A model generated the notes under the pieces. The model searched no databases. It was not told the DNA's origin and saw nothing but the letters and a program-made list of their open reading frames with translations. The position numbers were made by a program, and so were the translations under genes. From positions 9,362,001 to 9,426,000 of the forward strand of contig NC_043012.1 of assembly GCF_006345805.1 (NCBI RefSeq): a DNA stretch of 64,000 nt, given 5' to 3'. This stretch comes from Octopus sinensis (Eukaryota). Numbering within the stretch: position 1 is the first letter of the stretch; every line of letters starts with the position of its first letter. This document shows, one piece after another, positions 32,294 through 61,333 of this stretch.

Positions 32294-32384
<91 letters not shown>

Positions 32385-37714: not shown

Positions 37715-37779
<65 letters not shown>

Positions 37780-39503: not shown

Positions 39504-39840
39504 ACAAGAGCACTCAGAGAGCGCAAACCTCCGCCAAGGCATCACCAACGTCCTCTTAACGATTAGCGGGAGATGATTCTTAAAATGAGAATATTTGAAA
39601 TAGACTCAACTGCTCTCATAAACGAGAATGCTAAAAATGAACCCGACCGCTCTCAAAAATTAAGTAAAAAAAAAAATGGAAAAATAATTCATAATCCTTG
39701 TTTGGTACCGGATCGATCTCAAAATCTAATCATTTGTGCAAATTCGAATCCATCCAGTGGTTCTTGAGATATCTTGCCCACGGACAAACAAACAAACACG
39801 TCTGAAAACAATACCTCCATCTTCGCTAAGGCGGAGATAA
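39504..39840 (+). mobile_element. Non-autonomous Helentron-like element (mirror at ~59190-59525)
   Basis: acaagagcactcagagagcgcaaacctccgccaaggc at the start and a terminal hairpin cctccatcttcgctaaggcggag. Confidence 0.55.
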
Positions 39841-42800
39841 AAAGAGACCAGAATATGGTGGCACACCTGTCATTAATAGCATGGCCTGTTTCAATCGCGA
39901 ACTAAAATTATTGTGGGAATGAAGAATCGGTGATGCAAAATAGCTTATAGTTTGGATTTCTATAATACTTATAATACATTGGAAAATACTTCTGTGGACA
40001 AACTCCATCATGAAGATTAAAGAAATGTTGTGAAGATGTTATTGGTAGGAATGATTACAGCCACAAGAATCGCAATATTAAGTATTGGCATATGAACAAT
40101 TGGAATTGTGATTTACTGGTAGAAAAAAACGTCAAGTTATTTGCATTTGGTTGATAATAAAAGAGTAAAGGGACTTGCTTTAGGAAACAATAAAGATCAT
40201 AATAGGAACATGTTGAACTGTAGAGGAGATCTTCATATTTTAGAGATATGATATGGAAAGGCAATTTCTGTTTCAACACTTAAAAACGAAAGCTGTTAAA
40301 GTAGACTACATAATCTCTTGAGAGAATACTTTATAACTGACGTCTAATCACTTTGTGTCAATTAGAATGCGAAATTTCAAAGAGATGTGTGAAAAGCCCA
40401 TTACTCATTTATTCAAGAGAGCTGACGAAAGAAGAAATGCCATAACAGTACAGCAATTATTCCTGATGTTTATATTAAAATTTTCAAGTTTTACCATCGG
40501 TGTTAGTTCACGCATAAGTCTACCGACTAATCAGCAAACACACATGACATTTATATACTATGATGGCGAAAACCTTGTGTTATGTATTTACAGCACCAAA
40601 GTTTATTAATCAAATTTACCACAAAAACATATTTAACTTGAACAATATGCTGATAAAACCTTCCCTCCTCACCCTAGCACTCGTATATTTGATGGTATTA
40701 CACCATCACCGCAAATGGGAAACATAAGTTTCTGTTTAAGACTAGAATATGTTTCCTGTCAACGAGACTCCAAAGATATCTTGTGGTATTGATCACAAAT
40801 GGAATCGTGTAGTGATGTCCCGAACAGACATCGTGGCTCGCAAAAAATGCCCGGCCAAAATATTACAATCACTCGATAATCAATGTCTTTCGTTTGTCTC
40901 ATTTGCTGTTTCTATAGTAACGAATAACCCCTAGAACTTGTACTAGACACCATAGGTTCAATAATGTACTACTCCTCACGTTATGATAATCTTGTCCTAT
41001 CCCTTCTATCCTATGTCACAGCTTTGACAACATCTCTTCATGAGACAAACTAAAACAAATATTGTATTTTGTTTGAGGTTAAATGAGAAGTAAACACTAA
41101 CAACAAAAAGAAAAGAAAGTTTTCATATTTTTGTTCGAAAATTTGAAGCTAAGATAATTTCACTATTTATATTTGGTTATGGCATTTTTCAGCGAATATA
41201 TTTGCTTTCATGTCATGTTAATTCCCCCGTTTCTCATCTCCTTCACTATTCATGTTGAAGTTACATACAGACCTTCATGTTTACAAGGTTCCAATATCGA
41301 TTTCATGTCAAGTGCTCTTCGTCGATGAATCAATTGAAAAATAAAACTACTAAATTCATTTGAATATATTTAAAGCAAGTTATAACATTATGGTGAAATC
41401 GCTTCGCCCGTTATTTAAAACTGATTTATTATTATTATTATTATTATTATTTTTGTTACTTTATTGATAAAGCGAGCTAAAATAGTTTTCATTTTCAGAG
41501 GGATCTTTCAACTGAAATCAACATGCCAAAATAACAAACCGGAGAAAGTAGAATGAACAAAAGCTCACAGATTTTCTAGTCTTAAGAAAAATAATCCTTA
41601 GAATAAAACAAGAAAATTCTTTTACAAATATGATTTTCTCTCCGATACACCTAATGTTTATTTTTTAATTTACTTTTCTTCCTGTCTTCCATACTTTCTC
41701 CATTCATTCTTTCGTGACAACATGATTTGGTTGGTGATGCAACTTAAATATTTGAATATTCTCATATGGACCGAGTGGAGAAAAGAAAAAAGAGGGGGAA
41801 ATCAATATTTTTAGGAATTTTCTAGATGTTTATATAATAGTCACATGTCAAGTGGCGTATGATAGAAGCTGTTTAATGTTTATGCAAGAATCGTATTAAA
41901 AATATGAAGATGACGTATCCACTAATTAAGGGCTAAACTTTATACATTATTTACAAGGAAATAAAAAATCTGTATCAGAGTTTTCTTCCTTGTACGAAAG
42001 AGTTCGAAGACCAGAGCTAGGTTCACGTGCTGCTGCATTTGTGTTCTATTCCGATATCTTCGACAATACAAATATTACACATATAAATATTCTAGAATGC
42101 ACCATCTTAAAATACCTCATTAGTTATGAGGACAAAGGTTTACTCTCCGAAAAACTGACAGTATCGTTTTACCGCAACTTTTACAGCCTCAACAATCGTA
42201 CTGCGATCTGATGTTTTATTTATACTTTTAGTCGTAAATTGTAACCGGATAAGTCACTAGCGTTCTTTGATAAATAGTTTGATCATTTATATTCTACCGT
42301 TTGGATTACGATCCGTTGATGATCAATAGGCCTAGCTTTTAACAACTCAGTCTGGTTTACTAAGCAGTGATAAAATCATTTATACTCGTAAGAAAGCAAT
42401 TCTTTTCAATTTACCAAATTAATATCACTGCAACCGTGTAGATATATAAGATCTCATGGCTTTGCAGTTAACGAGTGGACACATTGACGACTTGGTCATA
42501 GCTTTAGAATTAATTCAGAAAACATCAAGTGTTCTGTTATCCGTAGTTTCACACATATTTTGATTTATACCGACCGAAGCGAAGTAAATTAAAGCTCGGA
42601 AGGAATGCAATTTGAACATATATTTTAATCCCAGAATGGAACGAGAATTTACATTTGGTATCTTGCTGTTATTCTTCCTATATATCTATTATCTTTAGAT
42701 AAATATTCTATTCATATCGAAGAAATGGCACTTTCTTACGAATCTAGGAACTGTGAAATTACTTTTATGTCACCACAGTACTTCAAAGATAATTATGTTC

Positions 42801-43032
42801 TGTCTGTATTGTTGAGTCAACATCTGCCTGCAAACAACAAGTTTTCTATTTAATTTCCACAGTGCTCTGCCCAGTTTATATGTACAATAAACGTATGCCT
42901 TGCTCACAGTAATAAATTGTCTCTTTCTCTGCGTGGTTTTCATGTCTATATATCTCTCTATACTTCCCCCACAAAGGCTTCAATATTTGGGCGTATTCCA
43001 GTTAAATAACTATCTTTCCAAATAAAGTAGGT

Positions 43033-43283
43033 GGTGGAAGCACTCCGACGGTTACGACGACGAGGGTTCCGGTTGATCCGAATCAACGGAACAGCCTGCT
43101 CAGAGTGAGAGAAAGTTGTGGTGAAAGAGTACAGCAGGGATCACCACCATCCCCTGCCGGAGCCTCGTGGAGCTTTAGGTGTTTTCGCTCAATAAACACT
43201 CACAACGCCCGGTCTGGGAATCGAAACCGCGATCCTATGACCGCGAGTCCGCTGCCCTAACCACTGGGCAATTGCGCCTCCAC
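43033..43283 (-). mobile_element. tRNA-derived SINE family 2 with 16-bp target-site duplication (mirror at ~55746-55996, +)
   Basis: TSD tccaaataaagtaggt at 43017-43032 and 43284-43299. tRNA-like head on the minus strand. Confidence 0.9.
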
Positions 43284-44449
43284 TCCAAATAAAGTAGGTA
43301 AACTCTATTACAATTAAACATTGGTAAGTGCTCTAAGTACTGCGTGACAAGTACTACACGATAGAAGCCGGCCATCTACATCATAGCAATGTAAATGACT
43401 ATAGGATATTTCTCTCTAACATCTATATTGATCTCTGCTGTTAGAGAACATAGTACTTTTCTGTGAATATTGCACCCTACTATCATATAACACAGGTCGT
43501 TACCGTTACAGAACTTAAGTTCCTGTTGTCGATATTGTTCTCAACAACATAACTCTAATTAGCATAGCTCTTAGATATTGAAACCGACATTAAACCTTTG
43601 ACCACACACACACACAAACACACGCGCACACTCAGACGCGCACACACACACATTAATAGGTAAAATGGATTGAATCAAAGCCTTTAATTCTCGACCGTGT
43701 TAAATTTAGTCTCCTTTTTCCTTGGACACAGATGAATCCGAAATTAAAGTAAGTATGATAATACAAACCGATAAAAACACACGCACTATATATTTGCTTC
43801 AGCTTTATTTATTTTTTTACATTAATCTTAAGAGACACACAAATAAGAAAGAAGAAAGCAAAGGACCACTGATGAGGTCACAGAAGTGTGACGAAAGAAC
43901 TCTGGCCGAAATACGATTGATGTAAAAAATAAAATAAAGCTGAAGCAAATTAACACCAAATATACAGTGCGTGTGTATTTATCGGCTAAACTGGCAACAT
44001 GACCATTCCTAAATACAACAATAATACAGACCATTTCATATATTACAACGAAAGGTGAGGATGAAACCAAAGAAATAAAATCAATATATAAAGCAAAAGT
44101 CAATCAATTTCTCTAGAAATAAAAAACAAAATAAGCATGTTTCTTCGCAACAGACGGAACAAACATGGAAAGAAATTGGTAAAATTAATTATTTATGGAA
44201 GACAGTAATCCCTCTTCGTATGTATTACGTGGTCGCCTGATCTGCTAAAAATAGCAGTTAAATATTATTCGGTCACACAACTTCTTAAAAAACAAACAAA
44301 CAAACAAAACAAAAAACAAAACAAAGAATGATCATGCTTATTAATGTCTCCTTGCACGCAATGTATCAAAGAAGAAAAGATATTGAATATCAGGCTATAA
44401 TATATTTCAATTCTATCTCATTTTATTCAGGGCTGTCTCGAATCTAAAC

Positions 44450-44650
44450 ACCACCGCCATCGCTGCTGCCATCGCCGCCGCCGCCACCACCACCACCACC
44501 ACCACCACCACCACCACCACCACCACCACTACCACGAACAACAACAACAGCAACACCACCACCACCAACAACAACAAAAACACCATCACCACCACCCCCA
44601 CCACCACTACCAACAACAAAAACACCACCACCACCACCAACAACAACACC
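44450..44650. repeat. (ACC/AAC)n triplet repeat; its mirror at ~54205-54575 is longer
   Basis: Seen directly. Source of the poly-G/poly-V ORFs. Confidence 0.95.
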
Positions 44651-45624
44651 ATTAAGACTACCCATATATTTAAAGTAATGATTGATTTTGTAACGTAAAA
44701 ATCTCTAAATAATCCGTCAAACTTGTAACTGTAAACATGCAGCAGTTTTATTTTTCTGCTTTAATACATTTGAGACTTCATTATTTCGTTGAGCAAGTCT
44801 TTCAATTTTGAATTATTTTGCAAGAATTTTGATCTGAAACTGCGTGTTTAAATATTTAGGAATACACACACCGGTTGTCGTATTTCTGTATTTCTCTTGT
44901 TTATTTTTTCCTAAGCATTTGGGGTTTGTTTATGTCCCTCACATTATTTCCCACTAAATCTTTAGCTTTGATAGGGATGTATATATTTTGGTAATAACAG
45001 AAAAAAAGAAAGAAACTCATATTCATTCATTAAGAAGGATACACATCTTTGTAGTGAAAAATACCATTGGAGTCATAAACAAACATCGGCTGTTTTGGAA
45101 AAGGAAAGAAAAGTGAAATATAAACAAACAACAACCGGTAAATGGGATTATGTTATGTTATTTCATCTCTCCATTGAAGTAACACAATATACCATTGCTT
45201 TCAAAATATCGTAAACATGTTAAGATGTAAATCTAAATTTCCCTTAAAAACAATCAAGTTTCCATCATTTAAATAATCACATTAAGTTTCACTTAAGTGA
45301 CAATAACATAATTAGATAGCATCGATAATTTAGACAAGAAGGCAGAACGACAAGACTGGGAATTAAAAAGATTTGAAAAGTGGGGCTGCAAGGTCGTAGA
45401 GCATAAAAAACAAAAACTTTCAAACATGTGCCAAAGAGAGTGTTCAGGTTGGCTTTTTATGCTATATACATCCGAGATTGTTCTCTTCATTGCAGCATTT
45501 CTCGCAACTCATGAAACCCCTTCTAAAACCCGAAACTATATACCACAAAACCTTTTCTCTGAAGCGCGACTGATTTTGCTACCCTACTGCGGCCACCTGA
45601 ATGATGATAATATTACTCCTTTCT

Positions 45625-45800
45625 AAGGCGGCGAGCTGACAGAAACGTTAGCACGCCGAGCGAAATGCTTAGCGGTATTTCGTCTGCCGTTACGTTCTGA
45701 GTCTAAATTCGGCCGAGGTCGACTTTGACCATCACCCTTTCAGTTGCGTACTGGCATCGATCTAATTGACCTGCTCCCTCCCCCAAAATTTCGACACTTC
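45625..45800 (+). mobile_element. SINE-like family 3 copy spanning the left-arm/spacer boundary
   Basis: Continues on the left beyond 45641. Only its first ~17 nt are present in the right arm (53225-53241). Confidence 0.8.
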
Positions 45801-48303
45801 TGCCTATTGTAGAAAAGAATAATAATTCTTTCTACTAAAGGCACAAGGCCTGAACTTTATGGGAAGGGATCAGTCGATTAGATCGACCGCAGTACGCAGC
45901 TGATACTTAATTTATCGACCCCCAAAAAGATGAAGAGCAAATTCGACCTCGGAGGAGCAGAGAACGTGAAGACTGACGAATTGCCGCTAAGCATTTTGGC
46001 CGGTGCGCTAAGGATTCTTCCAGCTCGCCAACTAATAATAATAATAATAATAATATAATAATAATGATGATAATAATAAGATAAAAATAACTGCCCCCAT
46101 GCAGCAACAAGCAATAGCGCTCATGGATTCTGGGCTTTACTAATTGGAAGTATTATCATGTACATGTCTGCCCTGATGCAGTAACAGGGACTGGCTCTTC
46201 ATGGCTTCTAATCTTAACTGATTGGAAGTGTTATCATCTACATTGTTTTGTCTTGGTATAAAAGGTGGGCTACAGCAAATATTCTGCTCAATACCACAGA
46301 TTTGCTTGTCAGGTGTTTGACCATAACTAGTTGAGCATGTCCCTTAGTGGCTGACGATATTTGCATCTTTGATCAGGAGAAGAAGTAGTGGGGGAGCTAA
46401 AACATCTTAAACAGACCCCAAATCAGTTTCATAAGGTTTTGCTTTTCCAGACGCCTAGTTCCAAGCCTAGTCACTTACCACGGTTAATTCACCGTACCGT
46501 TATTTTCTGGTCTTCTTCAAGAATAGTACCGGCCAACCCTGTTACTTGTGTGTCTGATACACAAGGCGGTGACATCATCCGAGGATACAAACACTGTTAA
46601 TGATTGTAATTATGAGAATGTTAACTATTATTTTAAATTTAGGCACAAAATCAACATTTTGTGATGATGGCTTGAATAATTACTGTCGACTCTAGTACTT
46701 GACTGGTACTTAATTTTATCTACTTTAGGGGTATGAAGTGCAAGTTTGACCTAGACGGAATTTGAACCCAGAAACTAAAGAACTGGAAGACATACTTTTA
46801 GCAGTTCTTCTAGATCTCAACTTTTACAATATAACAGTATTAATAATTGGAAGGTGGGTAATTGATTACATTGGCTTCAGTACCTGACTGATACTTCATT
46901 TTATTGATCGTGAGAACATGAAAGGAAAAGTTGACCTCGGCAGAATTTGAACTCCAAACATAAAGAGCTGGAAGAAATGCTGCTAAGCGTTTTGTTGAAC
47001 GCAGTAACGATTCTGTCACCGTATTCATATTGTTATATATATTATTGTTACCGGTTAGCTTAACAATAACAATTTTATCTGTGTCTATATTACTACTGCT
47101 GTACATGGTGATATCGTGACAGCAAATCCCACCTGTGCTGCTTCGAGTTTTCGGCAAAATTCCATATCAGCTGAAAGAGGAAGCTAACTGTAAGTATATC
47201 AATAGTTTGGGAAGGCATAGGAATAAAGATATGAGTTACAGAATAGCAGAGATACTTTTCAAAACCTTTCTCTTACAGAACCAGCAAAGGCACTCTATAA
47301 GCATGTATACCCGAGATAAACTATTTCTACACGCTTGCGTACTCACAATAATAGAATGTACATGGTTAAATACACAATGTTTTGCTACAAAACTGAAGCT
47401 GCCAACATAAAAAGACAATATTAAAGAATAGACATTCTACAAACGAAAGAAGTTAAATAACGCAGTTGGCCGGAAGTAACTTTTCTAGAAAACAACAATA
47501 TACACCGTTTGATTATTGAATACATGGCAGTGTTTAAATACATCGGAAATATTCAAATTCTTAAAATTGGAATATCTTCATTCATAATAAATTAAGATTT
47601 GTTTAGTATTTAGAAAAAAAAATTGTTCCCGCTGTTTCTCTGTGACTCCATCTAAAAGCAAAACTTTTTCAAAACAACCCGTAATTTTCCATAGGACAAT
47701 ATGCAGCAACAAAACAGAATTAAATATGACAGAGATTAAAGAGAAAGTAGAAATATTTTGGAAGCAAATTCTTGGAAACAATTCTAAGCATAACAAAACC
47801 GGCATAAACTGTACTTGATTTGAAAAATACGTTAGAAAAATATTATTGAAATCCATTTTCAAAAGCACGGCAAAAAATCTGATTTAGTTCTTGTATTATA
47901 TCTAATATTTGGGAAATGGAAAGTTTTCTGGCATTGACAGCATTTTAAACTTTAGATGGTGCGTTTGAAATTCTGCATTGCCAAACAACGCTGGTCTTCA
48001 GAATCCTCTTAAGTTTGAGAAGGTACGTAATTAGGTCCTTATTAGTAGAATAACAATGATCCCCAATCTGTCTAATGATTCTCCCAATATTGTCTGGCAA
48101 GAATTTGGAAACCTCGCCTCCAAAATATTAACACAAATGAACATTTACCAAAACTCAATATAATTCCAATAGTGTTCTTGACGAACGAGAACGCGAAACT
48201 CTGAGTAACAGTTTTTGTGTACTTTTTCTGCTTTTTAATAAACCATATTACTCTATTCGAGAACTATTTTTTCCACCTTGTTTCGCATTTGCGTCATTAC
48301 TCT

Positions 48304-48305
<2 letters not shown>

Positions 48306-48346
<41 letters not shown>

Positions 48347-48402
48347 GTGTATATATGTAGGTACACACACATACATGTATATGTATATGTATATAAATAT
48401 AT

Positions 48403-48498
<96 letters not shown>

Positions 48499-48572
48499 TA
48501 TTATATGTATATATATATGTAATAGAATATATAATATATATATATATAGATATTATATATATATATATGTGG

Positions 48573-48605
<33 letters not shown>
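48306..48605. repeat. TA-rich microsatellite flanking the array
   Basis: Seen directly. Confidence 0.95.
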
Positions 48606-48606
<1 letters not shown>

Positions 48607-49167
48607 ATTTATATATAGAGGGCATTATACATACATGCCAGAAGGCATTTATACATACAGCCACACGCTAAGGGGGACAATTAGTCATTCTACCAAAAAT
48701 ATTACTAATCCCACGAATGCAATTTTTCAAAGTAAGACATTTAAAAAAAATAGACCTGTATCACAGTGATTTCATACTTACGTATTCATCAGCAGGCCTG
48801 AATGCTTGATAAATAAACGACCCTGCCCCGCTTAAGCCGATCAGCTAATGATCAAAATCAACGAAGCAATGGGTGAGTTACATATATTACATCCGGATAA
48901 ATGGCAAACTTTTACGAATTGCATTTCGGGCGAGAAAAGTTTTTTCGGAATAAAAATTTAGCAATTAGGACAACTACTAATAAGGAAACTTAACAAGAAA
49001 TTGTCAGGTAGATAGCGTGAAAACCTCATAAGAGAAAAAAATTCGAAAATAATTATTTCTTATTGAACATATTAATTTATATATAGAGGGCATTATACAT
49101 ACATGCCAGAAGGCATTCACATACATGCCACACGCTAAGAGGGGACAATTAGTCATTTCTACCAAAA
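48606..49167 (-). mobile_element. Inverted ~1.2 units of the hammerhead tandem repeat (5' inversion)
   Basis: Reverse complement of the array unit. Contains the hammerhead at 48752-48799 on the minus strand. Confidence 0.95.
48752..48799 (-). ncRNA. Type I hammerhead ribozyme (inverted unit)
   Basis: AGGCCUG-CUGAUGA-AUAC(GUAA)GUAU-GAAAUCACUGUG-AUA^CAGGUCU on the minus strand. Confidence 0.9.
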
Positions 49168-52100
49168 TGTATAATGCCCTCTATATGCCCTATATATAAA
49201 TTAATATGTTCAATAAGAAATAATTATTTTCGAAATTTTTTCTCTTATGAGGTTTTCACGCTATCTACCTGACAATTTTGTTAAGTTTTCCTTATTAAGT
49301 AGTTGTCTTAATTGCTAAATTTTTATTCCATTGCCCGAAAAAACACTTTCTCTCCCGAAATGCAATTCGTAAAAGTTTGCCATTTATCCGGATGTAATAT
49401 ATGTAAACTCACCCATGTGCTTCGTTGATGTTGATCAGTAGCTGATCGGATTTAAGCGGGGCAGGGTCGTTTATTTATAATGCATTCAGGCCTGCTGATG
49501 AATACGTAAGTATGAAATCACTGTGATACAGGTCTATATTTTTTTAAATGTCTTACTTTGAAAAATTGCATTCGGTGGGATTAGTAATATTTTGGGTAGA
49601 AATGACTAATTGTCCCCATTAGCGTGTGGCATGTATGTATAATGCCTTCTGGCATGTATGTATAATGCCTCTATATATAAATTAATATGTTCAATAAGAA
49701 ATAATTATTTCGAAACTTTTTCTCTTATGAGGTTTTCACGCTATCTACCTGACAATTTCTTGTTAAGTTTTCCTTATTAAGTAGTTGTCCTTAATTGCTA
49801 AATTTTTATTCCGAAAAAACTTTTCTCTCCCGAAATGCAATTCGTAAAAGTTTGCCATTTATCCGGATGTAATATATGTAAACTCACCCATGTGCTTCGT
49901 TGATGTTGATCAGTTAGCTGATCGGCTTAAGCGGGGCAGGGTCGTTTATTTATAATGCATTCAGGCCTGCTGATGAATACGTAAGTATGAAATCCCTGTG
50001 ATACAGGTCTATATTTTTTTAAATGTCTTACTTTGAAAAATTGCATTCGGTGGGATTAGTAATATTTTTGGTAGAAATGACTAATTGTCCCTCTTAGCGT
50101 GTGGCATGTATGTATAATGCCTTCTGGCATGTATGTATAATGCCCTCTATATATAAATTAATATGTTCAATAAGAAATAATTATTTTCGAAATTTTTTCT
50201 CTTATGAGGTTTTCACGCTATCTACCTGACAATTTCTTGTTAAGTTTTCCTTATTAAGTAGTTGTCCTTAATTGCTAAATTTTTATTCCGAAAAAACTTT
50301 TCTCTCCCGAAATGCAATTCGTAAAAGTTTGCCATTTATCCGATGTATATATATGTAAACTCACCCATGTGCTTCGTTGATGTTGATCAGTTAGCTGATC
50401 GGCTTAAGCGGGGCAGGGTCTTTATTTATAATGCATTCAGGCCTGCTGATGAATACGTAAGTATGAAATCCCTGTGATACAGGTCTATATTTTTTTAAAT
50501 GTCTTACTTTGAAAAATTGCATTCGGTGGGATTAGTAATATTTTTGGTAGAAATGACTAATTGTCCCTCTTAGCGTGTGGCATGTATGTATAATGCCTTC
50601 TGGCATGTATGTATAATGCCCTCTATATATAAATTAATATGTTCAATAAGAAATATTATTTTCGAAATTTTTTCTCTTATGAGTTTTCACGCTATCTACC
50701 TGACAATTTCTTGTTAAGTTTTCTCCTTATTAAGTAGTTGTCCTTAATTGCTAAATTTTTATTCCGAAAAAACTTTTCTCTCCCGAAATGCAATTCGTAA
50801 AAGTTGCCATTTATCCGGATGTAATATATGTAAACTCACCCATGTGCTTCGTTGATGTTGATCAGTTAGCTGAGGCTTAAGCGGGGCAGGGTCGTTTATT
50901 TATAATGCATTCAGCCTGCTGATGAATACGTAAGTATGAAATCACTGTGATACAGGTCTATATTTTTTTAAATGTCTTACTTTGAAAAATTGCATTCGGT
51001 GGGATTAGTAATATTTTTGGTAGAAATGACTAATTGTCCCTCTTAGCGTGTGGCATGTATGTATAATGCCTTCTGGCATGTATGTATAATGCCCTCTATA
51101 TATAAATTAATATGTTCAATAAGAAATATTATTTTCGAAATTTTTTCTCTTATGAGGTTTTCACGCTATCTACCTGACAATTTCTTGTTAAGTTTTCCTT
51201 ATTAAGTAGTTGTCCTTAATTGCTAAATTTTTATTCCGAAAAAACTTTTCTCTCCCGAAATGCAATTCGTAAAAGTTTGCCATTTATCCGGATGTAATAT
51301 ATGTAAACTCACCCATGTGCTTCGTTGATGTTGATCAGTTAGCTGATCGCTTAAGCGGGGCAGGGTCGTTTATTTATAATGCATTCAGGCCTGCTGATGA
51401 ATACGTAAGTATGAAATCCTGTGATACAGGTCTATATTTTTTTAAATGTCTTACTTTGAAAATTGCATTCGTGGGATTAGTAATATTTTTGGTAGAAATG
51501 ACTAATTGTCCCTCTTAGCGTGTGGCATGTATGTATAATGCCTTCTGGCATGTATGTATAATGCCCTCTATATATAAATTAATATGTTCAATAAGAAATA
51601 ATTATTTTCGAAATTTTTTCTCTATGAGGTTTTCACGCTATCTACCTGACAATTTCTTGTTAAGTTTTCCTTATTAAGTAGTTGTCCTTAATTGCTAAAT
51701 TTTTATTCCGAAAAAACTTTTCTCTCCCGAAATGCAATTCGTAAAAGTTTGCCATTTATCCGGATGTAATATATGTAAACTCACCCATGTGCTTCGTTGA
51801 TGTTGATCAGTTAGCTGATCGGCTTAAGCGGGGCAGGGTCTTATTTATAATGCATTAGCCTGCTGATGAATACGTAAGTATGAAATCCCTGTGATACAGG
51901 TCTATATTTTTTTAAATGTCTTACTTTGAAAAATTGCATTCGGTGGGATTAGTAATATTTTTGGTAGAAATGACTAATTGTCCCTCTTAGCGTGTGGCAT
52001 GTATGTATAATGCCTTCTGGCATGTATGTATAATGCCCTCTATATATAAATTAATATGTTCAATAAGAAATAATTATTTTCGAAATTTTTTCTCTTATGA

Positions 52101-53219
52101 GGTTTTCACGCTATCTACCTGACAATTTCTTGTTAAGTTTTCCTTATTAAGTAGTTGTCCTTAATTGCTAAATTTTTATTCCGAAAAAACTTTTCTCTCC
52201 CAAATGCAATTCGTAAAAGTTTGCCATTTATCCGGATGTAATATATGTAAACTCACCCATGTGCTTCGTTGATGTTGATCAGTTAGCTGATCGGCTTAAG
52301 CGGGGCAGGGTCGTTTATTTATAATGCATTCAGGCCTGCTGATGAATACGTAAGTATGAAATCACTGTGATACAGGTCTATATTTTTTTAAATGTCTTAC
52401 TTTGAAAATTGCATTCGGTGGGATTAGTAATATTTTTGGTAGAAATGACTAATTGTCCCTCTTAGCGTGTGGCATGTATGTATAATGCCTTCTGGCATGT
52501 ATGTATAATGCCCTCTATATAAATTAATATGTTCAATAAGAAATATTTTTCGAAATTTTTTCTCTTATGAGGTTTTCACGCTATCTACCTGACAATTTCT
52601 TGTTAAGTTTTCCTTATTAAGTAGTTGTCTTAATTGCTAATTTTTATTCCGAAAAAACTTTTCCTCCCGAAATGCAATTCGTAAAAGTTTGCCATTTATC
52701 CGGATGTAATATATGTAAACTCACCCATGTGCTTCGTTGATGTTGATCAGTTAGCTGATCGGCTTAAGCGGGGCAGGGTCGTTTATTTATAATGCATTCA
52801 GGCCTGCTGATGAATACGTAAGTATGAAATCCCTGTGATACAGGTCTATATTTTTTTAAATGTCTTACTTTGAAAAATTGCATTCGGTGGGATTAGTAAT
52901 ATTTTTGGTAGAAATGACTAATTGTCCCTCTTAGCGTGTGGCATGTATGTATAATGCCTTCTGGCATGTATGTATAATGCCCTCTATATATAAATTAATA
53001 TGTTCAATAAGAAATAATTATTTTCGAAATTTTTTCTCTTATGAGGTTTTCACGCTATCTACCTGACAATTTCTTGTTAAGTTTTCCTTATTAAGTAGTT
53101 GTCCTTAATTGCTAAATTTTTATTCCGAAAAAACTTTTCTCTCCCGAAATGCAATTCGTAAAAGTTTGCCATTTATCCGGATGTAATATATGTAAACTCA
53201 CCCATGTACTTCGTTGATG
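49168..53219 (+). mobile_element. Retrozyme-like tandem array: ~8.5 copies of a ~476-bp unit, each complete unit with a type I hammerhead
   Basis: The marker aaattaatatg recurs at 49198, 49679, 50155, 50631, 51104, 51576, 52048, 52521 and 52992. No ORF of note. The hammerhead core is conserved in all 8 complete units. Confidence 0.9.
49488..49535 (+). ncRNA. Type I hammerhead ribozyme, unit 1 (others: 49963-50010, 50439-50486, 50913-50959, 51387-51433, 51857-51903, 52332-52379, 52800-52847)
   Basis: Stem I AGGCCUG/CAGGUCU (7 bp, one G-U; one G shorter in units 4 and 6), core CUGAUGA, stem II AUAC/GUAU with GNRA loop GUAA, GAAA, stem III AUC(A/C)CUGUGAU, cleavage triplet AUA. Confidence 0.92.
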
Positions 53220-53224
53220 GTGTA

Positions 53225-56200
53225 TGTCAGCTCGCCGCCTTAGAAAGGAGTAATATTATCATCATTCAGGTGGCCGCAGTAGGGTAGCAAAATCAGTAGC
53301 GCTTCAGAGAAAAAGTTTTGTGGTATATAGTTTCGGGTTTTAGAAGGGGTTTCATGAGTTGCGAGAAATGCTGCAATGAAGAGAACAATCTCGGATGTAT
53401 TTACCATAAAAAGTCAGCCTGAACACTTTCTTTGGCATATGTTTGAAAGTTTTTGTTTTTTATGCTCTACGACCTTGCAGCCCCTCTTTTCAAATCTTTT
53501 TAATTCCCAGTCTTTTCGTTCTTCCTTCTTGTCTAAATTATTGATACTATCTAATTATGTTATTGTCACTTAACTGAAACTTAATGTGATTATTTAAATG
53601 ATGTTAACTTGATTGTTTTTAAGGGAAATTTAGATTTACATCTTAACATGTTTACGATATTTTGAAAGGAAGCGTATATTGTGTTACTTCAATGGAGAGA
53701 TGAAATAACATAACATAATCCCATTTACCGGTTGTTGTTTGTTTATATTTCACTTTTCTTTCCTTTTCCAAAACAGCCGATGTTTATTTATGACTCCAAT
53801 GGTATTTTTCACTACAAAGATGTGTATCCTTCTCAATGAATGAATATGAGTTTCTTTCTTTTTTTTCTGTTATTACCAAAATATACACATCCCTATCAAA
53901 CTAAAGATTTAGTGGGAAATAATGTGAGGGACAGAAACAAGCACCAAATGCTTAGGAAAAAATTAAACAAGAGAAATACAGAAATACGACAACCGGTGTG
54001 TGTAGTTCCTAAATATTTAAACGCGCAGTTTCAGATCAAAATTCTTGCAAAATAATTCAAAATTGAAAGACTTGCTCAACGAAATAAATGAAGTCTCAAA
54101 TGTATTAAAGCAGAAAAAATAAAACTGCTGCATGTTTATAGTTGCGAGTTTGACGGATTATTTAGAGATTTTTACGTTACAAAATCAATCATTACTTTAA
54201 ATATATGGGTAGTCTTAATGTTGTTGTTGGTGGTGGTGGTGGTGTTTTTGTTGTTGGTAGTGGTGGTGGGGATGGGGGTGTATTTGTTGTTGTTGTTGTT
54301 GATGGTGTTTTTGTTGTTGTTGGTGGTGGTGGTGTTTTTGTTGTTGGTAGTGGTGGTGGTGGTGGGGTGTATTTGTTGTTGTTGTTGTTGATGGTGGAGG
54401 TGGTGGTTGTGATGGTATTTTGGTTGTTGTTGTTGGTGGTGGTGGTGGTGTTGTTGTTGTTCGTGGTGGTGGTGGTGGTGGTGGTGGTGGTGTGGTGGTG
54501 GTGGTGGTGGTGGTGGTGGTGGCGGCGGCGGCGGCAGTGATGGCGGCGGTGATGGCGGCGGCGATGGTGGTGGTGTCTAGATTCGAGACAGCCCTGAATA
54601 AAATGAGATAGAATTGAAATATGTTATAGCCTGATATTCAATATCTTTTATCCTTTGATACGTTGCGTGGAAGGAGACATTAATAAGCATGCTCATTCTT
54701 TGTTTTGTTGTTTTTTTGTTTGTTTGTTTGTTATTTAAGAAGTTGTGTGACCGAATAATATTTAAGTGCTATTTTTAGCAGATCAGGCGACCACGTAATA
54801 CATACGAAGAGGGATTACTGTCTTCCATAAATAATTAATCTTACCAATTTCTTTCCATGTTTGTTCCGTCTGTTGCGAAGAAACTTGCTTATTTTGTTTT
54901 TTATTTCTAGAGAAATTGATTGACTTTTGCTTTATATATTGATTTTATTTCTTTGGTTTCATCCTCACCTTTCGTTGTAATATATGAAATGGTCTGTATT
55001 ATTGTTGTATTTAGGAATGGTCATGTTGCCAGTTTAGCCAATAAATACAACGCACTGATATTTGGTGTTAATTTGCTGGTTAATTTTGCTTTTTATTTTT
55101 TTTTACATCAATCGTATTTCGGCCAGAGTTCTTCGTCACACTTCTGTGACCTCATCAGTGGTCCTTTGCTTTCTTCTTTCTTATTTGTGTGTCTCTTAAG
55201 ATTAATGTAAAAAAATAAATAAAGCTGAAGCAAATATATAGTGCGTGTGTTTTTATCGGTTTGTATTATCATACTTACTTTAATTTCGGATTCATCTGTG
55301 TCCAAGGAAAAAGGAGACTTAAATTTAACACGGTCGAGAATTAAAGGCTTTGATTCAATCCATTTTACCTATTAATGTGTGTGTGTGCGCGTCTGAGTGT
55401 GCGCGTGTGTTTGTGTGTGTGTGTGGTCAAAGGTTTAATGTCGGTTTCAATATCTAAGAGCTATGCTAATTAGAGTTATGTTGTTGAGAACAATATCGAC
55501 AACAGGAACTTAAGTTCTGTAACGGTAACGACCTGTGTTATATGATAGTAGGGTGCAATATTCACAGAAAAGTACTATGTTCTCTAACAGCAGAGATCAA
55601 TATAGATGTTAGAGAGAAATATCCTATAGTCATTTACATTGCTATGATGTAGATGGCCGGCTTCTATCGTGTAGTACTTGTCACGCAGTACTTAGAGCAC
55701 TTACCAATGTTTAATTGTAATAGAGTTTACCTACTTTATTTGGAGTGGAGGCGCAATTGCCCAGTGGTTAGGGCAGCGGACTCGCGGTCATAGGATCGCG
55801 GTTTCGATTCCCAGACCGGGCGTTGTGAGTGTTTATTGAGCGAAAACACCTAAAGCTCCACGAGGCTCCGGCAGGGGATGGTGGTGATCCCTGCTGTACT
55901 CTTTCACCACAACTTTCTCTCACTCTGAGCAGGCTGTTCCGTTGATTCGGATCAACCGGAACCCTCGTCGTCGTAACCGTCGGAGTGCTTCCACCACCTA
56001 CTTTATTTGGAAAGATAGTTATTTAACTGGAATACGCCCAAATATTGAAGCCTTTGTGGGGGAAGTATAGAGAGATATATAGACATGAAAACCACGCAGA
56101 GAAAGAGACAATTTATTACTGTGAGCAAGGCATACGTTTATTGTACATATAAACTGGGCAGAGCACTGTGGAAATTAAATAGAAAACTTGTTGTTTGCAG

Positions 56201-59200
56201 GCAGATGTTGACTCAACAATACAGACAGAACATAATTATCTTTGAAGTACTGTGGTGACATAAAAGTAATTTCACAGTTCCTAGATTCGTAAGAAAGTGC
56301 CATTTCTTCGATATGAATAGAATATTTATCTAAAGATAATAGATATATAGGAAGAATAACAGCAAGATACCAAATGTAAATTCTCGTTCCATTCTGGGAT
56401 TAAAATATATGTTCAAATTGCATTCCTTCCGAGCTTTAATTTACTTCGCTTCGGTCGGTATAAATCAAAATATGTGTGAAACTACGGATAACAGAACACT
56501 TGATGTTTTCTGAATTAATTCTAAAGCTATGACCAAGTCGTCAATGTGTCCACTCGTTAACTGCAAAGCCATGAGATCTTATATATCTACACGGTCGCAG
56601 TGATATTAATTTGGTAAATTGAAAAGAATTGCTTCCTTACGAGTATAAATGATTTTATCACTGCTTAGTAAACCAGACTGAGTTGTTAAAAGCTAGGCCT
56701 ATTGATCATCAACGGATCGTAATCCAAACGGTAGAATATAAATGATCAAACTATTTATCAAAGAACGCTAGTGACTTATCCGGTTACAATTTACGACTAA
56801 AAGTATAAATAAAACATCAGATCGCAGTACGATTGTTGAGGCTGTAAAAGTTGCGGTAAAACGATACTGTCAGTTTTTCGGAGAGTAAACCTTTGTCCTC
56901 ATAACTAATGAGGTATTTTAAGATGGTGCATTCTAGAATATTTATATGTGTAATATTTGTATTGTCGAAGATATCGGAATAGAACACAAATGCAGCAGCA
57001 CGTGAACCTAGCTCTGGTCTTCGAACTCTTTCGTACAAGGAAGAAAACTCTGATACAGATTTTTTATTTCCTTGTAAATAATGTATAAAGTTTAGCCCTT
57101 AATTAGTGGATACGTCATCTTCATATTTTTAATACGATTCTTGCATAAACATTAAACAGCTTCTATCATACGCCACTTGACATGTGACTATTATATAAAC
57201 ATCTAGAAAATTCCTAAAAATATTGATTTCCCCCTCTTTTTTCTTTTCTCCACTCGGTCCATATGAGAATATTCAAATATTTAAGTTGCATCACCAACCA
57301 AATCATGTTGTCACGAAAGAATGAATGGAGAAAGTATGGAAGACAGGAAGAAAAGTAAATTAAAAAATAAACATTAGGTGTATCGGAGAGAAAATCATAT
57401 TTGTAAAAGAATTTTCTTGTTTTATTCTAAGGATTATTTTTCTTAAGACTAGAAAATCTGTGAGCTTTTGTTCATTCTACTTTCTCCGGTTTGTTATTTT
57501 GGCATGTTGATTTCAGTTGAAAGATCCCTCTGAAAATGAAAACTATTTTAGCTCGCTTTATCAATAAAGTAACAAAAATAATAATAATAATAATAATAAT
57601 AAATCAGTTTTAAATAACGGGCGAAGCGATTTCACCATAATGTTATAACTTGCTTTAAATATATTCAAATGAATTTAGTAGTTTTATTTTTCAATTGATT
57701 CATCGACGAAGAGCACTTGACATGAAATCGATATTGGAACCTTGTAAACATGAAGGTCTGTATGTAACTTCAACATGAATAGTGAAGGAGATGAGAAACG
57801 GGGGAATTAACATGACATGAAAGCAAATATATTCGCTGAAAAATGCCATAACCAAATATAAATAGTGAAATTATCTTAGCTTCAAATTTTCGAACAAAAA
57901 TATGAAAACTTTCTTTTCTTTTTGTTGTTAGTGTTTACTTCTCATTTAACCTCAAACAAAATACAATATTTGTTTTAGTTTGTCTCATGAAGAGATGTTG
58001 TCAAAGCTGTGACATAGGATAGAAGGGATAGGACAAGATTATCATAACGTGAGGAGTAGTACATTATTGAACCTATGGTGTCTAGTACAAGTTCTAGGGG
58101 TTATTCGTTACTATAGAAACAGCAAATGAGACAAACGAAAGACATTGATTATCGAGTGATTGTAATATTTTGGCCGGGCATTTTTTGCGAGCCACGATGT
58201 CTGTTCGGGACATCACTACACGATTCCATTTGTGATCAATACCACAAGATATCTTTGGAGTCTCGTTGACAGGAAACATATTCTAGTCTTAAACAGAAAC
58301 TTATGTTTCCCATTTGCGGTGATGGTGTAATACCATCAAATATAACGAGTGCTAGGGTGAGGAGGGAAGGTTTTATCAGCATATTGTTCAAGTTAAATAT
58401 GTTTTTGTGGTAAATTTGATTAATAAACTTTGGTGCTGTAAATACATAACACAAGGTTTTCGCCATCATAGTATATAAATGTCATGTGTGTTTGCTGATT
58501 AGTCGGTAGACTTATGCGTGAACTAACACCGATGGTAAAACTTGAAAATTTTAATATAAACATCAGGAATAATTGCTGTACTGTTATGGCATTTCTTCTT
58601 TCGTCAGCTCTCTTGAATAAATGAGTAATGGGCTTTTCACACATCTCTTTGAAATTTCGCATTCTAATTGACACAAAGTGATTAGACGTCAGTTATAAAG
58701 TATTCTCTCAAGAGATTATGTAGTCTACTTTAACAGCTTTCGTTTTTAAGTGTTGAAACAGAAATTGCCTTTCCATATCATATCTCTAAAATATGAAGAT
58801 CTCCTCTACAGTTCAACATGTTCCTATTATGATCTTTATTGTTTCCTAAAGCAAGTCCCTTTACTCTTTTATTATCAACCAAATGCAAATAACTTGACGT
58901 TTTTATCTACCAGTAAATCACAATTCCAATTGTTCATATGCCAATACTTAATATTGCGATTCCTGTGGCTGTAATCATTCCTACCAATAACATCTTCACA
59001 ACATTTCTTTAATCTTCATGATGGAGTTTGTCCACAGAAGTATTTTCCAATGTATTATAAGTATTATAGAAATCCAAACTATAAGCTATTTTGCATCACC
59101 GATTCTTCATTCCCGCAATAATTTTAGTTCGCGATTGAAACAGGCCATGCTATTAATGACAGGTGTGCCACCATATTCTGGTCTCTTTTTATCTCCGCCT

Positions 59201-61252: not shown

Positions 61253-61333
<81 letters not shown>

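What the first reader, a model, noticed from the sequence alone, without database searches (positions are those of the whole stretch)
48606..53219. Hammerhead-ribozyme tandem array: a candidate cephalopod retrozyme / circRNA system
Seen: each complete ~476-bp unit has a type I hammerhead with intact core, GNRA-capped stem II and AUA site. Predicted + strand cuts follow 49528, 50003, 50479, 50952, 51426, 51896, 52372 and 52840, releasing seven monomers of 468-476 nt that begin CAGGUCU. Known: hammerhead cleavage leaves 5'-OH and 2',3'-cyclic phosphate ends that RtcB-type ligases or the ribozyme can join. Tandem hammerhead repeats (newt satellite 2, Schistosoma Sm-alpha, Dolichopoda pDo500, non-LTR retrozymes of mussel, coral and axolotl) yield monomeric and often circular RNAs. 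Inference: this is a protein-free, viroid-like retroelement family. I am not aware of one described from cephalopods but cannot check this.
Basis: partly seen in the sequence, partly recalled or inferred. Interest (0 to 1): 0.95.

Follow-up and report, generated by a model that had tools for sequence, protein, structure and literature searches.

The report
Hammerhead-ribozyme tandem repeat, octopus-like genome
A 477-base non-coding sequence repeated 8.5 times carries a complete self-cutting "hammerhead" RNA motif in every copy; it looks like a new (probably octopus) member of the known animal "retrozyme" class of ribozyme-bearing mobile repeats, not a new kind of system.

Summary
TRF finds a 472-bp-period array (49190-53219, 8.5 copies, 97% match), and all eight predicted plus-strand cut sites are right. 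A 1.2-unit inverted copy (48600-49170) carries a ninth hammerhead on the minus strand.

Each copy has helix I of 7 bp, CUGAUGA, helix II of 4 bp with a GUAA loop, GAAA, helix III of 3-4 bp and an AUA cut site. My descriptor found no such motif in 38 Mb of composition-matched random sequence.

The plus-strand monomer folds far better than shuffles (z -8.1, against -4.1 for the minus strand). Helix I brings its two ends together. There is no ORF longer than 67 aa.

Three points weaken the case:
- No Rfam hammerhead model matches, even at E<=10.
- The 10.1-11.1 pair is A-U, not the usual G-C.
- I found no second locus, no relative in another species and no expression data, so activity and mobility are inferred.

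The layout matches a Penelope-like insertion: a (TA)n flank, a head-to-head inverted 5'-truncated copy and a head-to-tail array. A transposon ORF in the window matches only Octopus sinensis.

Verdict: new member of a known kind (metazoan non-LTR retrozyme); moderate interest.

The parts
48306..48617 (.). (TA)n microsatellite flanking the outer (3') end of the inverted copy; likely the insertion target
   Evidence: TRF (period 2, 160 copies). The inverted copy ends in the unit's own TATATATAAATTAATAT stretch, which merges into (TA)n. (TA)n is a reported preferred target of Naiad Penelope-like elements (PMC8557442).
48600..49170 (-). Inverted, 5'-truncated 1.2-unit copy of the repeat. It covers unit positions 63-477 and then 1 to about 160, read on the minus strand.
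   Evidence: 95-96% identical to the direct units, with 22 differences in 579 aligned positions (8 substitutions).
48752..48799 (-). Hammerhead on the minus strand (A variant; stems 7/4/4 bp). Predicted cut between 48759 and 48758.
49171..49190 (.). Head-to-head junction between the inverted copy (5' end at unit position 63) and the first, 5'-truncated direct unit (about unit position 124-144), with a small scrambled duplication (GCCCTCTATAT / GCCCTATATAT)
   Evidence: It is not a perfectly symmetric fold-back: the self-reverse-complement alignment is only 89% identical with 76 gaps.
49190..53222 (+). Direct head-to-tail array: a 339-nt leading partial unit, seven complete monomers (468-476 nt) and a 382-nt trailing partial unit ending at about unit position 381. 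Consensus unit 477 nt, 33% GC.
49488..49535 (+). Hammerhead 1: AGGCCUG | CUGAUGA | AUAC-GUAA-GUAU | GAAA | UCA-CUG-UGAU | A^ | CAGGUCU. A variant. Cut after 49528.
   Evidence: energies.
49963..50010 (+). Hammerhead 2 (C at 15.4; helix III 3 bp). Cut after 50003.
50439..50486 (+). Hammerhead 3 (C variant). Cut after 50479.
50913..50959 (+). Hammerhead 4 (A variant). One G is deleted in the 5' strand of helix I, leaving 5 contiguous bp. Cut after 50952.
51387..51433 (+). Hammerhead 5 (1-nt deletion in helix III: AUC-CUGU-GAU). Cut after 51426.
51857..51903 (+). Hammerhead 6 (C variant). The 5' strand of helix I is shortened (UAGCCUG; 5 bp). Cut after 51896.
52332..52379 (+). Hammerhead 7 (A variant; stems 7/4/4 bp). 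Cut after 52372.
52800..52847 (+). Hammerhead 8 (C variant). Cut after 52840.
53223..53260 (.). Right junction. The array (...GTTGATGGTGTA) abuts TGTCAGCTCGCCGCCTTAG, the interior of a SINE-like sequence. This is also the inner end of the right arm of a large inverted duplication.
   Evidence: The left-arm copy at 45642/45643 runs uninterrupted through the same SINE-like sequence.

Best explanation
This is a non-coding, AT-rich 477-bp tandem repeat of the metazoan non-LTR retrozyme / hammerhead-satellite class, in a genome that is most likely octopod.

Proposed mechanism:
1. The array is transcribed on the + strand as a multimer. The promoter is unknown. The T7 run 10 nt after each cut site argues against RNA polymerase III.
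2. Each type I hammerhead cuts after the A of AUA, either alone or as a double hammerhead between neighbouring copies. [quoted passage not shown]
3. The monomer folds into a compact, 66%-paired structure. Helix I (5' CAGGUCU with AGGCCUG near the 3' end) holds the two ends together.
4. An RtcB-type tRNA ligase, or less efficiently the ribozyme itself, closes the molecule into a circle.
5. A reverse transcriptase supplied in trans copies the circular or multimeric RNA into more-than-unit cDNA. The most likely source is a Penelope-like element with a GIY-YIG endonuclease.
6. The cDNA integrates at a (TA)n microsatellite, possibly primed on the RNA's own UAUAUAUAAAUUAAUAU stretch. The result is a head-to-tail array preceded by a head-to-head inverted 5'-truncated copy.

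Shown here: the motif, its position in every unit, the fold statistics and strand asymmetry, the lack of coding capacity, and the insertion layout. Inferred: transcription, cleavage, circularisation, reverse transcription and the identity of the helper element.
For: - Complete hammerhead in 9 of 9 copies, with the cleavage site in the same place in every unit. There were 0 descriptor hits in 38.4 Mb of composition-matched random sequence.
- AUA is a natural cleavage triplet, as in the ELVd(+) hammerhead (PMC1636495 abstract).
- Unit of 477 nt, 33% GC, no ORF over 67 aa. No LTR, no tRNA-like part and no Pfam domain in nearby ORFs.
- The + strand monomer has MFE -137.7 kcal/mol against -94.2 +/- 5.4 for shuffles (z = -8.06). 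The - strand has -97.9 (z = -4.09). There are 19 G.U pairs among 157, and 66% of bases are paired. The structure therefore favours the ribozyme polarity.
- In both the linear and the circular MFE, helix I closes the molecule and helix II forms.
- Two A-variant hammerheads cofold, as the MFE, into the textbook double hammerhead: cores unpaired, an 11-position extended helix III with one U.U mismatch, -31.1 kcal/mol against 2 x -12.8. This matches the way weak-helix-III animal hammerheads work (PMC4209133, PMC7229834).
- The layout, (TA)n flank plus inverted 5'-truncated copy head-to-head with a multicopy head-to-tail array, matches the published hallmarks of Penelope-like insertions (PMC8557442). 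Those elements are the proposed helpers of retrozymes (PMC7229834).
- All published sequence-level features of non-LTR retrozymes are met, except unit size, which is slightly above the range.
Against: - No Rfam hammerhead model (types I, II, III, HH9, HH10) matches, at gathering score or at E<=10, even on a 96-nt slice.
- The 10.1-11.1 pair is A-U. G10.1-C11.1 is described as highly conserved in canonical hammerheads (PMC4209133).
- Loop 2 (GUAA) and the region beyond helix I do not resemble the canonical animal loop-loop contact.
- The isolated hammerhead is not unusually stable (z = -0.96). An alternative pairing, UGAU of the core with AUCA of helix III, is 2.4 kcal/mol better than the hammerhead fold.
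- Helix III of the C variant, about half the copies, has essentially no predicted stability, alone or as a dimer.
- Within the array the hammerhead is not better conserved than the body: 0.021 against 0.013 differences per site. Zero core changes against 1.35 expected is not significant.
- Only one locus is known. There is no second copy, no relative in another species, no covariation and no expression data.
- The unit (477 nt) exceeds the published 150-450 bp range.
- The right flank is not (TA)n and there is no target-site duplication.
- The assembly looks noisy and may be misjoined near the array.
Confidence: 0.6

Rival explanations
1. Relic or inactive hammerhead satellite. The repeat descends from a ribozyme-bearing element, but this hammerhead no longer cleaves usefully. 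The array is now an ordinary satellite maintained by unequal crossing-over and makes no circular RNA.
For: - A-U at 10.1-11.1 and no Rfam hit.
- Helix III is marginal, with predicted stability of -0.2 (A variant) or 0.0 (C variant) kcal/mol.
- A competing inactive fold is more stable.
- Two copies have a damaged helix I.
- There is no excess conservation of the hammerhead within the array.
- Penelope-like minimal hammerheads are reported to cleave poorly in vitro (PMC4209133).
Against: - All 14 core positions are intact in 9 of 9 copies, including the 4%-diverged inverted copy.
- There is strong strand-specific structure in the ribozyme polarity.
- The units are near-identical, which indicates recent amplification.
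- Most differences among units are 1-bp deletions that look like assembly noise rather than decay.
- Natural invertebrate hammerheads with a 2-bp helix III cleave efficiently (PMC7229834).
Confidence: 0.2
2. Part of a Penelope-like element rather than a retrozyme. The units would be pseudo-LTR-type sequences of a Penelope-like element, or of its internally deleted non-autonomous derivative, amplified head to tail. The hammerhead would play whatever role it plays in those elements, not circle formation.
For: - The layout is Penelope-like: inverted 5'-truncated copy, tandem copies and a (TA)n flank (PMC8557442).
- Non-autonomous elements of this type that form multicopy head-to-tail insertions are documented.
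- A second candidate pair of minimal hammerheads sits in an inverted structure flanked by (TA)n at 31410-32203.
Against: - No reverse transcriptase or GIY-YIG ORF was found in or next to the array or among the window ORFs tested.
- The hammerhead is of the canonical-like type (helix I 7 bp, helix II 4 bp, closed helix III). The minimal Penelope type has helix I of 4-5 bp, helix II of 6-8 bp and no helix III (PMC4209133).
- 8.5 copies of a 477-bp unit with nothing between them fits the retrozyme description.
- The two readings overlap if retrozymes are parasites of Penelope-like elements.
Confidence: 0.08
3. Chance motif. An ordinary 477-bp satellite happens to contain a hammerhead-like string with no RNA function.
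For: - Rfam is negative.
- The isolated motif folds no better than shuffles.
- It is one independent occurrence.
- In a multi-gigabase genome a few descriptor matches are expected by chance, and the first-stage scan selects for them.
Against: - There were 0 descriptor hits in 38.4 Mb of random sequence, even with looser stems than those observed.
- The motif coincides with a tandem repeat of the right size, composition and non-coding nature.
- The whole unit folds with z = -8, with strand asymmetry in the same polarity as the motif, and helix I closes the monomer.
Confidence: 0.04
4. Endogenised cDNA of an exogenous viroid-like or satellite-like circular RNA replicon. On this reading it was captured once by a cellular reverse transcriptase as a multimer and is not a genomic retroelement family.
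For: - Tandem more-than-unit copies are what rolling-circle reverse transcription of a circle gives.
- Only a single locus is known.
- The units are near-identical.
Against: - There is a ribozyme in one polarity only, and nothing on the minus strand at Rfam E<=10 or by my descriptor.
- Exact-word scans of the viral and metagenome collections found nothing.
- AT-rich composition and type I topology are typical of genomic animal retrozymes (PMC7229834).
Confidence: 0.04

Closest known systems
Metazoan non-LTR retrozymes (Cervera & de la Pena 2020, NAR; coral Acropora millepora, mussel Mytilus galloprovincialis, axolotl)
   Same: - Type I hammerhead once per unit in a head-to-tail array.
- Low GC (33%), no ORF, and no LTR, primer-binding site or polypurine tract.
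- The monomer RNA is predicted to be highly self-paired, with the hammerhead ends brought together.
- As in the mussel, the canonical loop 1-loop 2 nucleotides are missing.
- Possible co-occurrence with Penelope-like traces in the same genome.
   Different: - The unit is 477 nt, against 150-450 bp repeats and roughly 170-400 nt RNAs.
- The 10.1-11.1 pair is A-U, and loop 2 is a GNRA tetraloop.
- Helix III is longer (3-4 bp) than the 1-2 bp typical of animals.
- Expression, circles, cleavage and copy number are all untested here.
- The host lineage (cephalopod) has not been reported in the held literature.
Classical hammerhead satellites (newt satellite 2, Schistosoma Sm-alpha, Dolichopoda pDo500)
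   Same: - A tandem satellite-like repeat of a few hundred bp (pDo500 is about 500 bp) with a type I hammerhead per unit.
- A near-palindromic helix III that can form a double hammerhead between copies. Dimeric action is established for the newt and discussed for Dolichopoda (PMC2837043).
   Different: - Those hammerheads have G10.1-C11.1, and they are conserved across species with compensatory changes (PMC2837043). No cross-species data could be obtained here.
- I detected no sequence similarity to anything outside the array.
Penelope-like elements and their minimal hammerheads (Cervera & de la Pena 2014; Craig et al. 2021)
   Same: - Insertion layout: an inverted 5'-truncated copy head-to-head with tandem copies, and a (TA)n target.
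- A type I hammerhead in the repeated part.
   Different: - No reverse transcriptase / GIY-YIG ORF.
- The hammerhead is not of the minimal type; it has a closed helix III, a 7-bp helix I and a 4-bp helix II.
- The whole unit is only 477 bp.
Plant LTR retrozymes and hammerhead viroids / circular satellite RNAs
   Same: A small, non-coding, highly structured RNA that is cut to unit length by a hammerhead and is predicted to be circularised by a tRNA ligase.
   Different: - Those carry type III hammerheads and have high GC.
- Plant retrozymes also have LTRs, a primer-binding site and a polypurine tract.
- Viroids replicate RNA to RNA, often with ribozymes in both polarities. Here there is one polarity only, in a genomic DNA array.

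Membership tests
Hammerhead ribozyme, type I | Conserved core C3 U4 G5 A6 N7 G8 A9 ... G12 A13 A14, with A15.1-U16.1 and H17 (not G) at the cleavage site | tested here: met
   CUGAUGA, GAAA, A15.1-U16.1 and AUA are present and invariant in 9 of 9 copies.
Hammerhead ribozyme, type I | Three helices around the core, with helix I open and helices II and III closed by loops | tested here: met
   Helix I is AGGCCUG/CAGGUCU (7 bp with one G.U; 5 bp in two copies). Helix II is AUAC-GUAA-GUAU (4 bp). Helix III is AUCA-CUG-UGAU (4 bp) or AUC-CCUGU-GAU (3 bp).
Hammerhead ribozyme, type I | G10.1-C11.1 pair closing helix II (highly conserved in canonical hammerheads; PMC4209133) | tested here: not met
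   All copies have A10.1-U11.1. The pair keeps purine-pyrimidine orientation, but activity may be reduced. The reduction is from my own knowledge of mutagenesis work and was not checked here.
Hammerhead ribozyme, type I | Match to a curated covariance model (Rfam Hammerhead_1 and related models) | tested here: not met
   No hammerhead family is listed at gathering score or at E<=10 on 5.2 kb or on 96 nt.
Hammerhead ribozyme, type I | Tertiary contact between loop 2 and a loop or bulge in helix I | tested here: inconclusive
   The canonical animal loop nucleotides are absent. A GUAA loop faces a 9-nt unpaired AUAUUUUUU stretch beyond helix I in the MFE. No test is possible without relatives or structure probing. 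Mussel retrozyme hammerheads also lack the canonical contact.
Hammerhead ribozyme, type I | Site-specific self-cleavage | not testable with these tools
   This needs in vitro transcription and cleavage assays.
Metazoan non-LTR retrozyme | Type I hammerhead within short tandem repeats (150-450 bp), from dimers to large multimers | tested here: met
   There are 8.5 head-to-tail copies. The unit is 468-477 bp, just above the stated range.
Metazoan non-LTR retrozyme | Low GC (<45-50%), no coding capacity, no LTR / primer-binding site / polypurine tract | tested here: met
   GC is 33%. The longest ORF is 67 aa and differs between units. The six-frame translation has no relative among 5.8 billion proteins. 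No tRNA-like element was found.
Metazoan non-LTR retrozyme | Monomer RNA predicted to be stable and highly self-paired | tested here: met
   MFE -137.7 kcal/mol, z = -8.06, 66% of bases paired. The ribozyme polarity is favoured over the complement (z = -4.09).
Metazoan non-LTR retrozyme | Expressed as unit-length linear and circular RNAs | not testable with these tools
   No transcriptome of the source organism is searchable by DNA here.
Metazoan non-LTR retrozyme | Many dispersed genomic copies (mobility), sometimes with target-site duplications | tested here: inconclusive
   Only this locus was seen. There is none elsewhere in the 64-kb window or in 20.8 kb of O. sinensis, and no duplication is discernible. 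The host genome itself could not be searched.
Penelope-like element (autonomous) | ORF encoding a reverse transcriptase, with or without a GIY-YIG endonuclease, between pseudo-LTRs | tested here: not met
   There is no such ORF in the array and no Pfam hit in the 18 window ORFs tested. The six-frame scan of the window was not exhaustive.
Penelope-like element (insertion signature only) | Head-to-tail partial tandem, adjacent inverted 5'-truncated copy, and microsatellite (often (TA)n) target | tested here: met
   compared with the description in PMC8557442. The signature is met on the left side only; the right flank is a rearrangement junction.

The most novel reading that the evidence does not exclude
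This locus would be the first cephalopod retrozyme. It would also be structural evidence that non-LTR retrozymes are integrated by Penelope-type (GIY-YIG) machinery, a link so far only hypothesised. The evidence would be the (TA)n target, the priming-compatible UAUAUAUAAAUUAAUAU stretch exactly at the outer 3' end of the inverted copy, and the head-to-head inverted 5'-truncated copy next to a head-to-tail array. The ribozyme would be a working natural hammerhead with an A10.1-U11.1 pair and a GNRA loop 2. Such arrays might also act as hinges for large inverted duplications.
Probability: 0.25. Interest if true: 0.6.

Novelty: new member of a known kind. Interest (0 to 1): 0.45.

Why it matters
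If active, this element would extend ribozyme-made circular RNAs (retrozymes) to cephalopods, a group of wide interest for its RNA biology. It would also add a natural hammerhead variant (A10.1-U11.1, GNRA loop 2, 477-nt circle) that current covariance models miss.

The insertion layout gives a concrete, testable lead on which reverse transcriptase and endonuclease mobilise animal retrozymes. That question is left open in the primary papers.

It does not change the picture of what such elements are. The class, its mechanism and a molluscan example (mussel) are already published.

Tried and rejected
- **Rfam scans.** Whole window at gathering score, 48300-53500 at E<=10, and a 96-nt slice around one hammerhead. 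None listed a hammerhead. The hits were AT-rich microRNA and snoRNA noise in the (TA)n tract.
- **Exact-word scans for other copies.** The 23-25-nt hammerhead word and a 21-nt GC-rich body word were run against the viral and metagenome collections and gave 0 hits. Both metagenome scans are now used.
- **Six-frame protein trick.** I used the six-frame translation of the consensus unit as a pseudo-protein query, to fish out ORF calls on repeat-bearing contigs in public assemblies. There were no hits.
- **Organism identification.** The Helitron-like ORF at 21989-22516 gave no hit. The gag-like ORFs at 9081-9892 gave one hit, Octopus sinensis.
- **O. sinensis locus L001** (20.8 kb). It holds no copy of the unit.
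- **Pfam on 18 window ORFs**. Nothing significant: no reverse transcriptase or endonuclease.
- **Higher-order repeat of three units.** The A-C-C pattern at helix III position 15.4 and a shared G deletion in units 2 and 5 suggested this. Pairwise differences by lag show no real signal (lag 3 mean 11.5, against 12.3-12.8), so I dropped it.
- **Covariation between the inverted and direct copies.** There are only 8 substitutions, which is too few.
- **Excess conservation of the hammerhead within the array.** Not seen, and not informative, because differences are dominated by 1-bp deletions.
- **tRNA-derived or polymerase III origin.** No tRNA was found, and T7, T6 and T5 runs inside the unit argue against polymerase III read-through.
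- **Simple fold-back read artefact at the head-to-head junction.** Rejected as the sole explanation, because the two sides are out of register by about 60-80 nt.
- **One script timed out** and was rerun without the faulty shuffle.

Full report

Yes. Tandem Repeats Finder reports one long array, 49190-53219, with period 472, 8.5 copies and 97% matches.

The string CTGATGA-N-GAAA-N-CAGG occurs eight times on the + strand and once on the - strand, against 0.03 expected. Slicing the array after each GTGATA gives cuts after 49528, 50003, 50479, 50952, 51426, 51896, 52372 and 52840. The seven monomers are 475, 476, 473, 474, 470, 476 and 468 nt, and all start CAGGTCT.

The consensus unit is 477 nt with 33% GC. 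Units differ mainly by single-base deletions: 28 gap columns, against about 6 genuine substitution columns. That looks like long-read assembly noise on near-identical copies, not divergence.

**2. Anatomy of the motif**

Read on the + strand, each copy is:

5'-AGGCCUG (helix I, 5' strand) | CUGAUGA | AUAC-GUAA-GUAU (helix II, 4 bp, GNRA loop) | GAA | AUCA-CUG-UGAU (helix III, A15.1-U16.1 first) | A17 ^ | CAGGUCU (helix I, 3' strand)-3'.

All 14 core and cleavage-site positions are present in all nine copies.

Departures from the ideal:
- The pair closing helix II is A10.1-U11.1. G-C is described as highly conserved in canonical hammerheads (PMC4209133).
- Position 15.4 is A in four copies (three direct, one inverted) and C in four, and the ninth copy has a 1-nt deletion there. 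Helix III is therefore 4 bp with a 3-nt loop, or 3 bp with a 4-5-nt loop.
- Two copies lack 1-2 nt in the 5' strand of helix I.

AUA is an accepted natural cleavage triplet, as in the ELVd(+) hammerhead (PMC1636495 abstract).

My own descriptor required helix I >=5 bp, helix II >=3 bp and helix III >=3 bp. It finds the nine sites, nothing else in the window, and nothing in 300 random 64-kb sequences of matching dinucleotide composition on both strands. The nine sites are copies of one sequence, so this is one independent event. A chance origin inside a 477-bp unit has a probability below about 1e-4.

**3. The negative model test**

Rfam 15 lists no hammerhead family at gathering score on the window, at E<=10 on 48300-53500, or at E<=10 on a 96-nt slice.

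I attribute this to the A-U closing pair, the GNRA loop 2, the unusual helix III and possibly the speed filters. I could not prove that, because the tool does not accept edited sequences. It stays as evidence against 'canonical' membership.

**4. The rest of the unit**

There is no ORF over 67 aa, and the ORFs differ from unit to unit because of indels. A six-frame pseudo-protein of the consensus has no relative among 5.8 billion proteins.

- **Fold.** The + strand monomer folds to -137.7 kcal/mol against -94.2 +/- 5.4 for shuffles (z = -8.06). The complement reaches only -97.9 (z = -4.09).
- **Pairing.** 66% of bases are paired, and 19 of 157 pairs are G.U. This explains the asymmetry and points to the + RNA, the ribozyme polarity, as the structured strand.
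- **Ends.** In both the linear and the circular MFE, CAGGUCU at the 5' end pairs with AGGCCUG near the 3' end. The cleavage termini are held side by side, and helix II forms.
- **Hammerhead alone.** It is not especially stable (z = -0.96). An alternative pairing of UGAU from the core with AUCA from helix III beats the hammerhead fold by 2.4 kcal/mol.
- **Dimers.** Helix III as a hairpin has almost no predicted stability (-0.2 kcal/mol for A, 0.0 for C). However, AUCACUGUGAU is a near-palindrome. Two A-variant hammerheads cofold, as the MFE, into a textbook double hammerhead (-31.1 kcal/mol, against 2 x -12.8). A/C and C/C dimers are much weaker.

This is the behaviour described for animal type I hammerheads with a weak helix III (PMC4209133; PMC7229834).

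**5. Surroundings**

The array is preceded by a 1.2-unit copy in the opposite orientation (48600-49170, 95-96% identical, with its own intact hammerhead).

The two meet head to head at 49171-49190, and both are 5'-truncated: unit position 63 on one side and about 124-144 on the other. The outer 3' end of the inverted copy lies in the unit's own TATATATAAATTAATAT stretch and merges into a 312-bp (TA)n tract.

Craig et al. 2021 (PMC8557442) list these hallmarks of Penelope-like element insertions:
- partial or multicopy head-to-tail tandems;
- an inverted 5'-truncated copy adjacent at the 5' end;
- a bias for microsatellites, (TA)n for Naiads.

They also note remnants of such elements in cephalopods. 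Cervera & de la Pena 2020 name Penelope-like elements as the likely helpers of animal retrozymes. The locus therefore carries the footprint expected if that hypothesis is right. This is an inference from layout only.

The right end is different. The array stops mid-unit (about unit position 381) at 53222/53223. It is joined to the interior of a SINE-like sequence, which is also the inner end of the right arm of a large inverted duplication. The arms are 35047-45642 and 53223-64000, running off the window, and are 98.9% identical over 9.7 kb. The left-arm copy runs through the same SINE-like sequence without interruption, so the right junction is secondary. It is either a real recent inverted duplication hinged at the array or a misassembly.

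No reverse transcriptase or endonuclease domain was found in 18 window ORFs.

**6. Organism**

A gag-like transposon ORF (9081-9892, - strand) has a single relative in the protein database: LOC115225585 of Octopus sinensis, at 53% identity. The 20.8-kb O. sinensis locus around that gene shares several repeats with the window at 74-87% DNA identity but holds no copy of the hammerhead unit.

This supports a cephalopod source, probably an octopod. The species is not identified.

**7. What could not be obtained**

I found no second locus, no copy from another species, no covariation and no expression evidence. Four exact-word scans of the viral and metagenome collections gave nothing.

Within the array, the hammerhead region is not better conserved than the body (0.021 against 0.013 differences per site). 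Zero core changes against 1.35 expected is not significant.

**8. Interpretation**

The best reading (confidence 0.6) is a non-autonomous, non-coding hammerhead repeat of the non-LTR retrozyme class. The proposed steps are:
1. Multimeric + transcripts are made.
2. The hammerhead cuts after AUA, alone or as a dimer.
3. [quoted passage not shown]
4. A tRNA ligase of the RtcB type closes the circle. RtcB circularised about 30% of mussel and over 80% of axolotl retrozyme RNA in vitro, against 1-3% self-ligation (PMC7229834).
5. A Penelope-type enzyme reverse-transcribes the RNA to more than unit length and integrates it at (TA)n.

The anatomy and statistics are shown here; every biochemical step is inferred.

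Rival readings:
- an inactive relic satellite (0.2);
- a pseudo-LTR array from a Penelope-like element (0.08);
- a chance motif (0.04);
- an endogenised exogenous viroid-like RNA (0.04).

The remainder allows for assembly artefacts that would affect the architecture.

**9. Comparison and novelty**

The sequence-level defining features of non-LTR retrozymes are met, with unit size slightly above the published range. The functional features are untested.

As a hammerhead, the motif meets the core and helix rules. It fails the G10.1-C11.1 convention and the Rfam model test.

Full-text searches found no hammerhead or retrozyme reported from cephalopods. The class itself is established, including in a mollusc, the mussel.

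This is a new member of a known kind. Interest is moderate (0.45), mainly for the insertion layout that links retrozymes to Penelope-like machinery and for the unusual hammerhead variant.

Noticed in passing
window 35047-45642 and 53223-64000: A giant inverted duplication. The arms are at least 10.6 kb long, and the right arm runs off the window. They are 98.9% identical over 9666 bp (about 38 mismatches and 68 gap positions), and the inner 1.16 kb is 94.7% identical. The 7.6-kb spacer holds SINE-rich DNA, the (TA)n tract and the whole hammerhead array, and arm homology ends exactly at the array's right edge. It is either a recent inverted segmental duplication hinged at the array or a long-read misassembly.
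   Followed up: partly
window 31410-32203: A palindrome of about 370-bp arms (97% identical, 64-nt spacer), flanked on both sides by (TA)n (31370-31421 and 32275-32384). Each arm carries near its outer end a candidate minimal type I hammerhead, for example + strand 32064-32106: CCAC|CUGAAGA|UUGUC-GAUCAA-GACAA|GAAA|CGAUUGU-A^GUGG. It resembles the pairs of minimal Penelope-like hammerheads on opposite strands described in PMC4209133. The evidence is weak: the relaxed descriptor gives about 0.017 chance hits per window, the fold has z = 0.0, and Rfam lists nothing.
   Followed up: partly
window 8840-9892 (- strand): Three adjacent ORFs (111-123 aa) look like a frameshifted gag-like transposon gene with a CCHC-like knuckle. 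A 217-aa query from two of them (9081-9892) has as its only database relative an uncharacterised Octopus sinensis protein, LOC115225585, at 53% identity. There is no Pfam domain.
   Followed up: partly
window 21989-22516 (- strand): A 175-aa ORF that from memory resembles the N-terminal region of Helitron-type proteins. It has no hit in the protein database or in Pfam.
   Followed up: partly
window 45643-47010 and 53223-53260: Several copies, in both orientations, of a SINE-like sequence (motifs such as GCTAAGCATTT...GCGTGCTAACG.TTCTG.CAGCTCGCC). One copy spans the left-arm boundary intact, and its right-arm counterpart is cut by the hammerhead array. The window shares short repeats with O. 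sinensis at 81-87% identity, for example 14688-14879.
   Followed up: no
window 49590-49670 and the same place in each unit (unit positions about 98-143): Each unit contains a 23-bp direct duplication, TGGCATGTATGTATAATGCC(T/C)TC x2. It forms the long central hairpin of the predicted monomer structure.
   Followed up: no
array 49190-53222, helix III position 15.4: The A/C polymorphism in helix III follows the order A, C, C, A, (deletion), C, A, C along the array, which hints at a three-unit higher-order repeat. Overall pairwise differences by lag do not support this.
   Followed up: yes
whole window: Microsatellite density is very high (112 TRF rows: (TA)n, (TG)n, (ATCT)n, (CCA)n/(TGG)n and others). 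The AT-rich tracts give spurious sub-threshold microRNA matches in Rfam.
   Followed up: no
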